In this document: positions 44,170 through 53,812 of the stretch, piece after piece
Layout: every line of letters starts with the position of its first letter
How positions within the stretch are numbered: position 1 is the first letter of the stretch
Source: Zygnema circumcarinatum SAG 698-1b
Lineage: Eukaryota > Plantae > Zygnematophyceae
Assembly (NCBI GenBank): GCA_037447605.1
Contig: CM074823.1
Coordinates: forward strand, 1,240,001 to 1,304,000
Reading direction: 5' to 3'
Length of the DNA stretch: 64,000 bases
Notes under the pieces: generated by a model
Databases searched by the model: none
The model's input: the letters and a program-made list of their open reading frames with translations, nothing else
What the model was told of the DNA's origin: nothing
Translations under genes and position numbers: made by a program

Positions 44170-47100
44170 ATGGCGCCGCCTGACGGAGAAGGGAGCAGCT
44201 CGGAGGCGGCGCCGCTTTTGGTGCGGAACCGAGAGGACCTGCAACACGCGGAGACTTTTCTGAGGGTCATGTGAGAGAGCGCTCTCTCTCTGTCATTGTC
44301 ACTCTCTCTCTCACTCTCTCTCTCCCTGTCACCCTCTTTGTCACGCTCACTTTCTCTCACTCTCTCTCTCTGTTGCTCTCTCTCTCGTTCTCCCACTCTC
44401 TGTCACTCCCCCTCGTTCTCATTCTTGTCTCTCTCCCTGTCTCTGCTCCTCTTACTCTTTCTCTCTCTCTCTTTGCCCGTCTGACCCCCTTCTTCTTTCT
44501 CTGCCCGCTCTCTATATTCCCTCGCTCACTCTCTTTAACTCTTCCTCTCTCTCCGACTCCCCCCTCTCATTCCCCCTCTCATTCTTCTTCTCGCCATCTC
44601 TGCCTCTCTCGCTCGTTCTTCTCTCCCTCCCTCCGTCTCTCGTCTCCCCCCTCTCCCTTCCTCTCCCGCGCTTCTTCCCTTTCTCCACTTCTCCCCGCTC
44701 CCGTTGGCCTCCCTGCCCTTCCCCCTCACCCTCCCCCCCTCTCCTCCCTCCCCCCCCTTCTCTCCCACCCTCTACCCCCCTCCCTCTTTCTCTCCCTCTC
44801 CCTCTCCCTCTCCCTCTCCCTCTCCCTCTGTCCGTACAGCTCCGTCCCAGGCGGCAGCGCGGAAGCTTCCCGTTACCTGGTGCAGCGATACCAGGTGGAC
44901 GCCTTCCTTAAGTCGATGGTGGGAGTGAGGGCGGCGGCGGAGGCCAAGCGTGTTCTGAGGAAGCTTCCGGGACACATCCAAGGCTTCCCGGAGGAGTACA
45001 CTGTGGAGCATATGCTCACCTTCCAGCAGGTGCTCTCTCTCTCTCTCTCTCCCTCTCTCTCTCTCTCCCCCCCTCTTTCTTCTTTCTCTCTCCCTCTCTC
45101 CCCCTCTCTCTCTTCTCTTTCTCTCTCTCTCTCTCTCTCCCCATCTCTCTCTCTCACTCCCTCTCTCTCTCTCCCTCTCTCTCTCTCCCTCTCTCTCTCT
45201 CTCTTCTCTTCCTCTCTCTCTCTCTCTCTCTCTCTCTCTCTCTCTCTCTCTCTCTCTCTCTCTCTCTCTCTCTCTCTCTCTCTCTCTCTCTCTCTCTCTC
45301 TCTCTCTCTCTCTCTCTCTCTCTCTCTCTCTCTCTTTCTCTAAACCCTAAAAGGACCAAAACTCCAAAAACCTGAAACTCAAAGACACTTTCAACCCCGA
45401 ACCAAACCCAACCCACCTATGTGCCCCTATCTCTTCCTTTTTCCGTAGGTCCCTATCGGCACTTCTCTCCTCCGCATGGAGCTCTCCCTCCAGGAAAAGG
45501 CCACTAAGCTCTTTCAAGAAATTTTAAAGTTTATGTGTGTGGAGGAGGGCCGGTTTCTTCCGAGAACAGAGGAGGTGGCGATAGTTCAAAGGATTCACGC
45601 TCTCCTATTGAAGCATCCTGTGCTGAGGGATGAGGCTATGGCGCAGCTGCAGAAGCAGACGAGATTCAATCCCTTCATGTGAGTGGGAGAGAGGGAGGGA
45701 GGGGGAGAGAGAGAGGGAAGGGGAGGGGAGGGGTGGGGGAGGGGGGAAGATGGAGGTTAGGAACGGAACGGAACGGGTTAGGTGGGCAAGCAAGAGAATG
45801 TGAAGCTTTAACTATCCTGGGCTTTATCATGCATCCGTGGAAGTCCCGATCGACTTGTATTCTGACTGTTCTCTCTCCTCCCCTCTCTCTCTCTCTCTCT
45901 CTCCGTCTCTCTCTCTCTCTGTCCCATTCATACACTGTCTTTTCGTCCGTCTCCTCTTTCCCCCCCTTAATCCCGTGTCTTTCTTCTCAATTACTCCTGT
46001 TTTTCCGTCATGTCTTCCTCCATGACTCCTTCCTCCCGCCATTTTCCCTTCCCTCCCCCTACTTTGTCTCTTCCTCTCCCTCCCTCTCCACTCTCCTCCT
46101 CCCCCCCCCCCTCCTCCCCTCCTCTCCCTCCATCTCTTCTTCCCCCCTCCTTTCGCACCCCTTACCGCTCCCAACCCTCACCCCGTCCCTCTCTTCTCTT
46201 TCTCCTGCCCCCATTTTTTTCCCAACTTTCTCCGCCTCCCCCGCTCCCCCAATCCATTTTAATTTTCCTCCCTCCCCCACTCCCTCGTCCTCTCTCCCTC
46301 TCCCACTTGCCTTCCCATCCCTCCCTCCCCACTCTCCCTCTCCTTCGCTTCCCCCAATTCTCGCTCCCTTCCTCTCTCTCCCCCTTGCCTCCCCCCTCCC
46401 TCCGTCCCCCCTTACCACCCCCCCCCCACTTCTTCCCGTTCTCCCTTTCCCTCCCTCCCCCTCGCCCCCTCGCCCCTCCCTCCCCCCACCCCTCCCNNNN
46501 NNNNNNCTCTCTCCCGCAGGCAATCCTGCTTCCGCGCTTGGGAACTCATGCGCCTTGTCGCCGCTGCCTTCCCTCCCTCCCCCTCCTTTGCCGGCCCACT
46601 TTCGGAATATTTTCGAGCTGAAACTTTGGACGAGGAGGCCCCTCCCTCCCTCCATCAGGCAGTGTTGGCCGCTTGGGGGGCAGTTGATCGAGGATTGAAA
46701 ATGGGGCCAAGAAAGTTTTTACCTTCCGCGGAGGAAATCGATTTTTTTATGGACGGAAATACGCTCTGTACGGTGGTTTATATGTACGATGAGTCCTCGG
46801 AGCCGTTGCATTATAATATGACGACGACTGTGGGAGTGGCATTGAAGGTATGGGTAGGGTTTAGAGAGTGTGAGAGAGAGAGAGAGAGAGGGAGAGAGAG
46901 AGAGAGCGAGAGAGAGGGAGAGAGAGAGAGAGCGAGAAAGAGGGAGAGAGAGAGAGAAGTGCATAGAGGAAATAAAAAAAGTGAGAATAGAAGGAAATAA
47001 TGATGAGAGGAATCGGGAAAAGGCGTGATTAAGCTTCTCGCTTAATTAAAGGACTTGATTTGTGTCTGCGTCTGTGAGAGAGTGAGAAGAGGGAGAGAGA

Positions 47101-53100: not shown

Positions 53101-53812
53101 TCTGCTCGACATTCACATTGCTGACGCCATCAGAATTGCTCCGCCGCAAACTCTGAAGGCTTCACATGTTGACAGTTCCTTTGAAACGGAATCCGTAACA
53201 ACAGCCACACATGGAAAGGGGTCGCACATGTCAAGTGCAAGTGGTGACGTCAGCACGACGTCATCGGCCAGTGAGACATCGCCACCTGGCAGTGTGGCTG
53301 AGAGCGGCGAAAACGAAACTGAGGACGACAGTGGGACGTCAGCAAACAGAACGGAGAGCATGGAACAGCAGGGACGGTCGTACGGAACGCCGAACGGTAA
53401 CGAAAAGAGGCACGGAAACGGAAACGGAAACGGTAACGGAAACAGACATGGAAAGAAAAGCCCAGCGACTCTCTCTCCCTCTCGCTCCTCCCTCTCTCCG
53501 AGTTCTCCTTCACCGAGTCCGACTTCTGGGTTGAGGGAGGGAAGTGTGAGAGAGGGAGGGAAGGCCGGTACGAAGGGAGAGAAGGTGGGAGAGGTGGGAG
53601 AGGTGGGAGAGGGAGGAGAGAAAGTTGTGCCGTTGGTCTCTTCCCCGAAATTCTCTTCTCGTGTTCTTCCCTTCCTTGCAAAAGTAAGAGGTGGGGTTTC
53701 TCCCTTGCCTAAAAGTAAACTGGGGTTCAGTGATACCCAGTCAACAAAGTCAACGGAAACGGAGGAGGTGGAGATGAGGACGAAAATTGAAAAGGACGGT
53801 GGGGAGGAGTGA
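44170..53812 (+). CDS. KCBP/ZWICHEL-related MyTH4-FERM protein (~795 aa) with a Ser/Thr/Gly/Pro-rich tail and no kinesin motor
   Basis: Exons 44170-44270, 44840-45029, 45449-45678, 46520-46847, 47601-47718, 48303-48472, 48575-48690, 49392-49494, 49641-49793, 51650-51799, 53084-53812 (TGA); 2,388 nt in phase. Collinear with the KCBP tail: HMLTFQQVPIGTSLL, LRDEAMAQLQKQTRFNP, AWELM, GPRKFLPSAEEI, CRLLLKKRVFR..D..TEPTFIHLSYIQVRHDYVEGLYPV, LAALQL, LGVNRRG, EFATRQGEEICILLDIHI. Confidence 0.9.
50330..51640 (+). repeat. (CCCT)n-based polypyrimidine tract with ~11 embedded CCTAACTC motifs (MyTH4-FERM intron 9)
   Basis: CTAAC near 50790, 50842, 50890, 50935, 51026, 51074, 51123, 51277, 51430, 51491 and 51551; earlier units carry CCTACCTC variants. 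Confidence 0.85.
51805..52587. repeat. Very long (CT)n microsatellite (~780 nt) in MyTH4-FERM intron 10
   Basis: Near-pure CT dinucleotide run. Its true length may be mis-estimated by the assembly. Confidence 0.95.

What the first reader, a model, noticed from the sequence alone, without database searches (positions are those of the whole stretch)
44170..53812. KCBP-type MyTH4-FERM protein that appears to have no kinesin motor
Seen: ten exons plus the start of the eleventh are collinear with the MyTH4 and FERM regions of KCBP/ZWICHEL, through ...EFATRQGEEICILLDIHI. They are followed by ~225 aa of S/T/G/P-rich, non-coiled-coil sequence and a TGA. Only ~1 kb remains before the convergent GT61 stop. 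I found no P-loop (GQTGSGKT), SSRSH or DLAGSE motif on either strand in the rest of the window. Established: plant MyTH4-FERM domains are normally fused to a coiled coil, a kinesin-14 motor and a calmodulin-binding helix; MyTH4 binds microtubules and FERM has been linked to actin/cargo. Inference: this is a diverged, motorless paralogue that could act as a static microtubule-actin/membrane linker or a dominant-negative regulator of KCBP.
Basis: partly seen in the sequence, partly recalled or inferred. Interest (0 to 1): 0.75.

Follow-up and report, generated by a model that had tools for sequence, protein, structure and literature searches.

The report
Motorless KCBP-type MyTH4-FERM gene
A streptophyte alga carries an intact, expressed gene for the cargo- and cytoskeleton-binding front half of the plant kinesin KCBP with no motor, and at least three to four related algae (where named, Closterium) have the same kind of gene, so it is a conserved tail-only family and not a broken gene.

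Summary
An 11-exon gene on the + strand (ATG 44170, TGA 53810-53812, all introns GT-AG) encodes 795 aa. Residues about 45-575 are collinear with the MyTH4-FERM half of KCBP. The last ~220 aa are a disordered S/G/E/T-rich tail. The N gap (46497-46506) lies in intron 3 and does not touch the reading frame. Transcript contigs from three studies splice exon 10 to exon 11, read through the TGA and end 534-727 nt later, so the mRNA has no motor exons. tblastn with three full KCBPs finds no stalk or motor anywhere in the window. The closest relative (792 aa, complete ORF in RNA contigs of another organism) has the same architecture and shares a C-terminal motif. Seven further motor-free relatives exist, including annotated but unnamed Closterium proteins. 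In a careful tree the eight motorless proteins form one clade, which groups with land-plant KCBPs against chlorophyte-type KCBPs. In two of the three subclades, including this gene's, the FERM F3 lobe has switched from basic to acidic. I found no paper describing the family. Function (non-motor microtubule/actin/cortex adaptor) is inferred. Whether a canonical KCBP coexists could not be tested.

The parts
44085..44164 (+). Three copies of GTGCCACGTG (G-box core CACGTG) just upstream of and inside the inferred 5'UTR; a putative promoter element, function not tested
   Evidence: 4 matches in the window (3 here, 1 at 37687) against 0.01 expected. The TSS near 44114 is inferred from the length of the X1 contig.
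44170..44270 (+). Exon 1 (ATG at 44170; aa 1-34)
   Evidence: The N-terminal residues align with P0001, P0003 and the genomic contig L014.
44840..45029 (+). Exon 2 (aa 34-97; region before MyTH4, RYQVDAFL..FQQ)
   Evidence: tblastn with KCBP.
45449..45678 (+). Exon 3 (aa 98-174; start of MyTH4)
   Evidence: Pfam MyTH4 profile 1-30; tblastn with KCBP, 45% identity.
46497..46506 (.). Assembly gap (10 N) inside intron 3, 13 nt upstream of the exon 4 acceptor; does not affect the CDS
46520..46847 (+). Exon 4 (aa 174-283; rest of MyTH4)
   Evidence: Pfam MyTH4 profile 33-104, E 1.1e-10; 76% identity to P0001.
47601..47718 (+). Exon 5 (aa 284-322; FERM F1 lobe)
   Evidence: alignment.
48303..48472 (+). 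Exon 6 (aa 323-379; FERM F1 lobe)
48575..48690 (+). Exon 7 (aa 380-418; FERM F2)
   Evidence: Pfam FERM_M E 1.1e-5.
49392..49494 (+). Exon 8 (aa 418-452; FERM F2)
   Evidence: Pfam FERM_M weak match; alignment.
49641..49793 (+). Exon 9 (aa 453-503; end of F2)
   Evidence: tblastn with KCBP, 45-47% identity.
51650..51799 (+). Exon 10 (aa 504-553; FERM F3, PTB-like lobe, unusually acidic)
   Evidence: The end of this exon is the loose end of the RNA contigs before 53080.
53084..53812 (+). Exon 11: last 22 aa of F3 (GEEICILLDIHIADAIR), then a 220-aa disordered tail and TGA at 53810-53812
   Evidence: RNA contigs of 3 studies cover it without a joint.
53663..53737 (+). Conserved C-terminal motif VLPFLAKVRGGVSPLPKSKLGFSDT (aa 747-771)
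   Evidence: 17 of 25 residues identical to P0001; 300 shuffles gave mean 9.2 and maximum 13.
53813..54539 (+). 3'UTR; contig ends at 54346 (X1), 54374 (X2) and 54539 (X5)
   Evidence: table 8.

Best explanation
Shown: this is a real, spliced, expressed gene for a stand-alone MyTH4-FERM protein derived from the tail of the kinesin-14 KCBP. It has no coiled-coil stalk, no motor and no calmodulin-binding helix. It belongs to a conserved motor-free family. Named members are from Closterium, so the family is probably zygnematophyte. The family has at least three subclades. This gene's subclade carries a long disordered Ser/Gly/Glu/Thr-rich tail ending in a conserved (V/I)LPFLxK-x5-SPLPKSKLxFSDT motif. 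Inferred: the protein works as a non-motor adaptor. The MyTH4 domain and the N-terminal region hold it on microtubules. The FERM domain binds F-actin and/or a cortical or organelle partner. Without a dimerising coiled coil it acts as a monomeric tether or marker, not a bundler or transporter. The disordered tail and its terminal motif are a regulatory or docking site. The charge reversal of the F3 lobe (about +2 in KCBPs, -8 here) implies that the F3 ligand has changed since the motor was lost.
For: Intact 11-exon ORF with canonical splice sites. MyTH4 and FERM_M on the exons. RNA contigs from three studies (2978, 2115 and 2268 nt) lie collinear on 53080-53940 and 54024-54346/54374/54539; the 83 nt between them (53941-54023) are a repeat that the tool skipped, but the contigs' own coordinates run on across it. 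Their loose end before 53080 equals the end of exon 10, so they are spliced RNA that reads through the TGA into a 3'UTR. The 2978-nt contig fits the whole model plus about 56 nt of 5'UTR. No stalk or motor in the window. P0001 (792 aa) is 53% identical over aa 21-772, has a complete ORF with UTRs in four RNA contigs, and Pfam gives MyTH4+FERM_M+IRS without Kinesin. Its AlphaFold2 model has pLDDT above 90 for about residues 60-610 and a disordered tail, and best matches the myosin VIIa/VIIb/X MyTH4-FERM cassettes (E 4.5e-26). A second motor-free paralogue, P0003 (582 aa), occurs in the same run. Closterium genes P0032 and P0042 have no motor within 10 kb downstream. Eight motorless proteins form a clade (99/95), and that clade plus embryophyte KCBP is separated from other KCBPs (100/99). 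Indels are shared by the three motorless proteins aligned there (this gene, P0001, P0003). Introns 1-3 are at the same positions in a third organism's genomic contig. The tail motif is conserved beyond chance. For function: KCBP's N-terminal region and MyTH4 bind microtubules, FERM binds F-actin, and bundling needs the coiled coil (PMC4574192). The MyTH4-FERM domain keeps KCBP in the cortical division zone (Buschmann et al. 2015, by its title as cited in PMC5972558). In moss the FERM domain is needed for chloroplast transport (PMC12961179).
Against: No functional data exist for any family member. Microtubule and actin binding are extrapolated from Arabidopsis KCBP at about 36% identity. The acidic F3 lobe may mean that KCBP-like FERM interactions are lost. 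The conserved tail motif gets low AlphaFold2 confidence and is not predicted to dock anywhere. Only the 3' part of the transcript was laid on the window; exons 1-10 rest on homology and on contig length. dN/dS could not be computed because dS is saturated. In a quick tree that includes fragments, the Closterium Naga pair is not resolved with the other motorless proteins.
Confidence: 0.6

Rival explanations
1. Origin rival: this is not a paralogue beside KCBP. It is what became of KCBP itself in Zygnematophyceae. The motor (and later the stalk) was lost once, no canonical KCBP remains, and the tail-only gene then duplicated into three subclades. It therefore cannot act by regulating KCBP.
For: The motorless clade groups with embryophyte KCBP exactly where zygnematophyte orthologues would be expected (100/99). 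Closterium members still keep a short KCBP-like coiled coil after the FERM domain but have no motor within 10 kb, which looks like an intermediate state. None of the proteins found that group with the motorless clade or are named as Closterium carries a motor.
Against: Absence was not tested. The whole assembly and other zygnematophyte genomes could not be searched. The protein searches list only the best hits or 50%-identity representatives, so a canonical zygnematophyte KCBP could hide in a land-plant cluster. No KCBP from Klebsormidium, Chara or Coleochaete was identified to polarise the tree.
Confidence: 0.35
2. Dominant-negative or competitor: a canonical KCBP coexists, and the motorless protein competes for its microtubule, actin or cargo sites and so damps KCBP-driven transport.
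For: The MyTH4-FERM cassette is collinear with KCBP and is well folded in the closest relative's model. The MyTH4 net charge is similar to that of KCBPs.
Against: Coexistence is not shown. The F3 charge reversal of about 10 units and about 36% identity argue that the ligands differ. A family kept in three subclades with its own conserved tail motif suggests a function of its own.
Confidence: 0.12
3. Split KCBP: the motor half is encoded by a separate gene and associates in trans (for example through the conserved C-terminal motif), rebuilding a two-chain transporter.
For: The short C-terminal motif is conserved in an otherwise free-drifting tail. The KCBP family shows modular tail swapping: Bryopsis Kin14VIc has the motor with a VHS tail instead of MyTH4-FERM (PMC12961179).
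Against: No candidate partner was identified. Subclade C proteins (P0003, 582 aa) end 5 residues after the FERM domain and lack the motif.
Confidence: 0.08
4. Decaying remnant (pseudogene) of KCBP, or an assembly or annotation artefact with the motor exons elsewhere.
For: There is an N gap inside the gene. Three other 10-N gaps in the window are followed by 100% duplicated sequence, so the assembly has local flaws.
Against: The ORF is intact across 11 exons. Spliced transcripts from three studies end in a 3'UTR. The gap is intronic and has no flanking duplication. The same architecture appears in independent transcriptomes and genomes.
Confidence: 0.03

Closest known systems
KCBP / ZWICHEL (kinesin-14 class VI; KIN-14E in Arabidopsis, KIN-14I in rice)
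   Same: The N-terminal region, MyTH4 domain and three-lobed FERM domain are collinear with KCBP residues about 60-590 at 35-37% identity. The family groups with embryophyte KCBPs in the tree.
   Different: There is no coiled-coil stalk, no kinesin-14 motor and no calmodulin-binding helix. F3 is acidic (net -8 against +2). This gene, P0001 and P0003 share several indels relative to KCBP. A 220-aa disordered tail carries its own conserved terminal motif.
MyTH4-FERM cassettes of myosins VIIa, VIIb, X and Dictyostelium Myo7
   Same: These are the best structural matches of the closest relative's model (5mv9, 5xbf, 5ejy, 3pzd; Foldseek E 1e-24 to 1e-26, target TM about 0.65-0.7). These cassettes bind cargo peptides, and some bind microtubules.
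   Different: Sequence identity is only 17-22%. Those cassettes sit at the tail of an actin motor, whereas here no motor is attached.
Engineered motorless KCBP fragments (NT-MyTH4-FERM with or without the coiled coil; Tian et al. 2015, PMC4574192)
   Same: The natural protein corresponds to the NT-MyTH4-FERM construct, which bound microtubules and F-actin in vitro.
   Different: Those are laboratory truncations of Arabidopsis KCBP. The bundling form needed the coiled coil, which this gene lacks (the Closterium Naga members keep a short one).
Bryopsis Kin14VIc (KCBP-type motor with a VHS tail; PMC12961179)
   Same: It shows that the tail and motor modules of the KCBP family can be uncoupled in evolution.
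   Different: It is the reciprocal case: the motor is kept and MyTH4-FERM is lost.
Animal motor-free MyTH4-FERM proteins (PLEKHH1/2/3, MAX-1); recalled from my own knowledge, not tested here
   Same: A MyTH4-FERM cassette without any motor domain, used as a cortical or cytoskeletal adaptor.
   Different: Those carry PH domains and coiled coils in front of the cassette and are not related to KCBP. Pfam found no PH domain here.

Membership tests
KCBP (kinesin-14 class VI) | N-terminal MyTH4-FERM tandem homologous to that of KCBP | tested here: met
   Pfam on exons, tblastn and alignments, tree.
KCBP (kinesin-14 class VI) | Coiled-coil stalk after the FERM domain | tested here: not met
   No heptad pattern. 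AlphaFold2 gives no helix in the tail. No tblastn hit to KCBP residues 590-880.
KCBP (kinesin-14 class VI) | C-terminal kinesin-14 motor domain | tested here: not met
   No motor hit in 64 kb at E<=10 with three KCBPs. No coherent motif set. The transcript ends in a 3'UTR. Pfam Kinesin is absent from the relatives P0001 and P0003.
KCBP (kinesin-14 class VI) | Calmodulin-binding helix after the motor | tested here: not met
   Nothing in the window aligns to the KCBP C-terminus. The ORF ends in a non-homologous tail.
MyTH4-FERM cassette proteins | MyTH4 helical bundle packed against a three-lobed FERM (F1 ubiquitin-like, F2 helical, F3 PTB-like) | tested here: met
   Tested on the closest relative P0001 (64% identical in this region): pLDDT above 90 for residues 60-610, and top PDB matches are MyTH4-FERM cassettes. 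Pfam gives MyTH4, FERM_M and IRS/PTB. The window protein itself could not be folded whole, because no reference exists for a spliced product.
Motor-free KCBP-derived family (defined here; named members are from Closterium) | Monophyly with other motor-free MyTH4-FERM proteins and shared indels relative to KCBP | tested here: met
   Clade support 99/95 in the careful tree. The B+C subclades get 100 in both trees. The position of the Closterium Naga pair is unresolved in the quick tree with fragments. Indels shared by this gene, P0001 and P0003, the only motorless proteins in that alignment.
Motor-free KCBP-derived family, subclade B (this gene, P0001, fragment P0002) | Long disordered tail ending in (V/I)LPFLxK..SPLPKSKLxFSDT | tested here: met
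   For P0002 only the N-terminal exons are on the contig.
PLEKHH / MAX-1 type motor-free MyTH4-FERM proteins | PH domains upstream of the MyTH4-FERM cassette | tested here: not met
   Pfam finds no PH domain on the exons or on P0001.

The most novel reading that the evidence does not exclude
[quoted passage not shown] In their lineage the 'plant-unique' kinesin was turned into a family of stand-alone MyTH4-FERM scaffolds. First the motor was lost (Closterium forms still keep a stalk remnant), then the stalk. After that came a charge reversal of the FERM F3 lobe and, in one subclade, a new disordered tail with its own docking motif. This would be a documented motor-to-scaffold transition, and a natural experiment on what the KCBP tail does without its motor, for example marking the cortex or division site.
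Probability: 0.3. Interest if true: 0.72.

Novelty: new variant of a known kind. Interest (0 to 1): 0.56.

Why it matters
KCBP is treated as a plant-unique chimera of a kinesin motor and a myosin-type tail. What its MyTH4-FERM tail does on its own has only been studied with engineered truncations. A naturally motor-free, conserved and expressed version exists in a streptophyte alga and its relatives, which by their named kin are probably zygnematophytes, the sister lineage of land plants. This shows that the tail is a self-sufficient functional module. It also gives a natural system for studying motor-independent roles such as microtubule-actin linkage, retention at the cortex or division site, and organelle anchoring. 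It bears on how the cytoskeletal toolkit changed around the origin of land plants. [quoted passage not shown]

Tried and rejected
1. The word-index search with the whole of P0001 was swamped by low-complexity words and gave only 3 hits. Restricting it to the folded region worked.
2. dN/dS between the window CDS and the P0001 transcript could not be computed: dS is saturated and the NG86 method returns it as undefined. I used conservation of architecture and of the tail motif instead.
3. Earlier scan notes had nothing for MyTH4/FERM/KCBP, 'motorless', or a KCBP sequence. The kinesin notes of this genome concern other genes.
4. The Atlas feature search returned only generic MyTH4-FERM clusters.
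6. The strict kinesin motif regex misclassified Bryopsis and MMETSP KCBPs as motor-free. Pfam corrected this, so motor absence is claimed only where Pfam or tblastn was used.
7. I considered that the C-terminal motif might dock back onto the FERM domain, as the C-terminal tails of ezrin/radixin/moesin proteins do. AlphaFold2 gives it pLDDT about 30, so there is no support for this.
8. I considered a hidden splice donor inside exon 11 (GTGAG at 53271, 53546, 53684, 53809). The RNA contigs show no joint there.
9. The spliced 795-aa product could not be given to Pfam, the structure predictor or the exact look-ups, because it has no reference and long sequences must not be typed. I used single exons and the relative P0001 instead.
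Full report
**The gene.** I read 43800-55800 and spliced the open stretches of the three + frames. This gives one 11-exon gene. Exons: 44170-44270, 44840-45029, 45449-45678, 46520-46847, 47601-47718, 48303-48472, 48575-48690, 49392-49494, 49641-49793, 51650-51799, 53084-53812. Every intron is GT-AG. The ORF is 2388 nt (795 aa) with ATG at 44170 and TGA at 53810-53812.

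**The assembly gap.** The flagged gap (46497-46506) lies in intron 3, 13 nt upstream of the exon 4 acceptor. The exon 3/4 junction (..RFNPFM|QSCFRAWELM..) aligns without an indel to KCBP and to a transcript-derived relative. No unique sequence is duplicated across this gap. Three other 10-N gaps further downstream do have such duplications. The gap therefore does not affect the reading frame.

**Domains.** Pfam on single exons gives MyTH4 on exon 3 (profile 1-30) and exon 4 (profile 33-104, E 1.1e-10), and FERM_M on exons 7 and 8. It finds nothing on exon 11. After HIADAIR there are 220 residues rich in S (18%), G (14%), E (11%) and T (9%). This tail has no heptad pattern, and AlphaFold2 gives it no secondary structure and pLDDT about 50.

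**No motor in the window.** A six-frame scan for P-loop, switch I and switch II motifs gives only scattered chance matches. tblastn of three full-length KCBPs (Sphagnum P0089, a Logan-derived KCBP P0087, Arabidopsis-type P0198) against all 64 kb at E<=10 hits only KCBP residues about 60-590. Those hits are collinear with exons 2-11, and nothing matches stalk, motor or C-terminus. The downstream neighbour is a convergent GT61 gene (Pfam Glyco_transf_61 on 55666-56028, minus strand). Its last ORF ends at 54819, 1007 nt after the TGA.

**The 3' end is real.**
- Seven runs from three studies of one organism hold the whole of 53084-54300.
- I laid contigs of four runs on 53021-55150. One long contig per study (X1 2978 nt, X2 2115 nt, X5 2268 nt) lies without differences on 53080-53940. 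Each then continues on 54024-54346, 54024-54374 and 54024-54539 respectively. The 83 nt in between are a repeat that the tool skipped, and the contig coordinates are continuous across it.
- The part of each contig that hangs off before 53080 reads AGACCTCACAGGGGTCGAGTTCGCCACCCG. That is the end of exon 10, and its last four bases ACAG equal 53080-53083.
- So the contigs lack the 1284-nt intron 10. They are spliced RNA, read straight through the TGA and end in a 3'UTR of 534-727 nt.
- No joint was reported at any of the four GTGAG/GTAAG donor-like sites in exon 11 (listed).
- The X1 contig length equals the full model plus about 56 nt of 5'UTR.
- GT61 contigs on the other strand begin at 54822-54838.
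- Misassembly, a hidden downstream motor and a silent pseudogene are therefore excluded for the dominant transcript. They rest on homology and on the contig length.

**Relatives.** An exhaustive HMMER search with exon 4 against 1.84 billion representatives gave 78 hits.
- The best hit, P0001, is 792 aa and 53% identical to the model over aa 21-772. It is encoded as a complete ORF with 5' and 3' UTRs in four RNA contigs of one study. Pfam gives MyTH4+FERM_M+IRS-type PTB and no Kinesin.
- P0001 also has a long low-complexity tail. It shares the terminal motif ILPFLTKGKNPGSPLPKSKLRFSDT with this gene's VLPFLAKVRGGVSPLPKSKLGFSDT: 17 of 25 identical, against a shuffle mean of 9.2 and a maximum of 13.
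- The same run also expresses P0003 (582 aa), which ends five residues after the FERM domain.
- A length-limited search that excludes full KCBPs added P0223 (638 aa) and P0224 (706 aa, Closterium sp. NIES-53).
- P0032 and P0042 are unnamed proteins of Closterium sp. Naga37s-1. Their loci show no motor within 10 kb downstream, and they still keep a short coiled coil after the FERM domain.
- P0011, filed under the amoeba Leptophrys vorax, is sister to the Closterium NIES-53 protein. It is probably algal prey RNA (an inference).
- A genomic contig from a further run (L014) carries exons 1-4 with introns at the same three positions.
- Two metagenome fragments also fall in the family.

**Phylogeny.** A careful IQ-TREE analysis (LG+C20, 28 rows, 647 columns) puts the eight motor-free proteins in one clade (99/95). 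That clade plus the seven embryophyte KCBPs is separated from thirteen chlorophyte-type or unplaced KCBPs (100/99). Inside the motor-free clade there are three subclades:
- A: the Closterium Naga pair.
- B: this gene and P0001.
- C: P0003/P0223 and P0011/P0224.

B and C are sisters (100/100), and one organism has both, so the duplications are old. In a quick tree that includes short fragments, B+C stays at 100 but subclade A is unresolved between B+C and the land-plant KCBPs. Monophyly of all three subclades is therefore likely but not certain. This gene, P0001 and P0003, the three motorless proteins in that alignment, also share several indels relative to KCBP.

**Structure and surface.**
- AlphaFold2 on P0001 with a 40-row alignment gives pLDDT above 90 for about residues 60-610 and a disordered tail. 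There is one medium-confidence helix (665-697) that is not conserved in the window protein.
- The best PDB matches are the MyTH4-FERM cassettes of myosin VIIa, VIIb, X and Dictyostelium Myo7 (E 4.5e-26 downwards).
- Net charge per subdomain shows one sharp difference. The F3 lobe is +2 (pI about 9.0) in all seven canonical KCBPs examined. In subclades B and C it is -5 to -8 (pI 4.4-5.4), with -8 here. Closterium subclade A is still +1.
- MyTH4 charge is alike in both groups.

**Mechanism (inferred).**
- In Arabidopsis KCBP, the N-terminal region and MyTH4 bind microtubules and FERM binds F-actin. A motorless construct bundles filaments only when the coiled coil is present (PMC4574192).
- The MyTH4-FERM domain keeps KCBP at the cortical division zone (Buschmann et al. 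2015, by its title as cited in PMC5972558).
- In moss the FERM domain is needed for chloroplast transport (PMC12961179).
- The most likely role here is therefore a monomeric, non-motor tether or marker that links microtubules to actin, cortex or an organelle, regulated through its Ser/Thr-rich tail and terminal motif.
- The F3 charge reversal argues that its FERM ligand differs from KCBP's. This weakens the dominant-negative idea.

**Open point.** I could not search the rest of this assembly or other zygnematophyte genomes for a canonical KCBP. So the family may be either a paralogue beside KCBP or what remains of KCBP after motor loss. The tree position and the Closterium intermediates fit the second reading, but absence is untested.

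**Novelty.** No paper in the library holds both MyTH4 and Zygnematophyceae. KCBP together with zygnematophyte terms occurs only in one reference list. Kinesin-14 together with zygnematophyte terms occurs only in a dynein paper. The Closterium members are 'unnamed protein product'. The scan's own notes hold nothing on this family.

**Verdict.** This is a new variant of a known kind: a conserved, expressed, tail-only descendant of KCBP.

Noticed in passing
window 44085-44164 (and 37687-37696): The decamer GTGCCACGTG (G-box core) occurs three times within 80 nt just before the ATG of the MyTH4-FERM gene and once at 37687, making 4 matches against 0.01 expected by chance. It may be a light- or stress-responsive promoter element.
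   Followed up: partly
window 44271-53083 (introns of the gene), e.g. 50400-51640 and 51800-52600: Seven of the ten introns are 75-95% pyrimidine on the sense strand, filled with (CT)n, (CCCT)n and related low-complexity arrays up to about 1.2 kb. Intron 4 is the mirror case (GA-rich, 31% C+T). Exons are 47% C+T. This causes the extreme GC and AT skew of 50-52 kb.
   Followed up: partly
window 57125-57424 = 58581-58880; 57759-58058 = 59045-59344; 61358-61657 = 63340-63639: Three 100%-identical direct repeats each begin exactly at the end of a 10-N gap (58571-58580, 59035-59044, 63330-63339). They are probably unmerged contig overlaps. As a result, an upstream coding exon of the minus-strand gene that carries the GT61 domain appears twice (58098-58544 and about 59384-59830).
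   Followed up: partly
window 54819-60565, minus strand: A convergent GT61 glycosyltransferase gene (Pfam Glyco_transf_61 on 55666-56028). Its transcript contigs end at 54822-54838, leaving about 280-480 nt between the two 3' ends.
   Followed up: partly
window 53412-53443 and 58098-58544 / 59384-60565 (minus): The (ACGGAA)n stretch that encodes NGNGNGNGN in the tail is also held by short, very deep contigs from other transcripts. A similar [11 protein letters not shown] stretch is encoded in the neighbouring GT61 gene's upstream exon, so this is a recurrent coding microsatellite in this genome.
   Followed up: no
P0011 (EukProt EP00475, Leptophrys vorax) and P0224 (Closterium sp. NIES-53): The 'Leptophrys vorax' protein is sister to a Closterium protein on short branches (100/100). 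The amoeba's transcriptome probably contains RNA from its desmid prey.
   Followed up: partly
L015 and L016 (Closterium sp. Naga37s-1, CANJKZ010000142.1 and CANJKZ010000532.1): The Closterium motor-free genes lack the introns that separate exons 3, 4 and 5 of the window gene. After the FERM domain they keep a coiled-coil-like stretch that recalls the KCBP stalk, which may be an intermediate stage of motor loss.
   Followed up: partly
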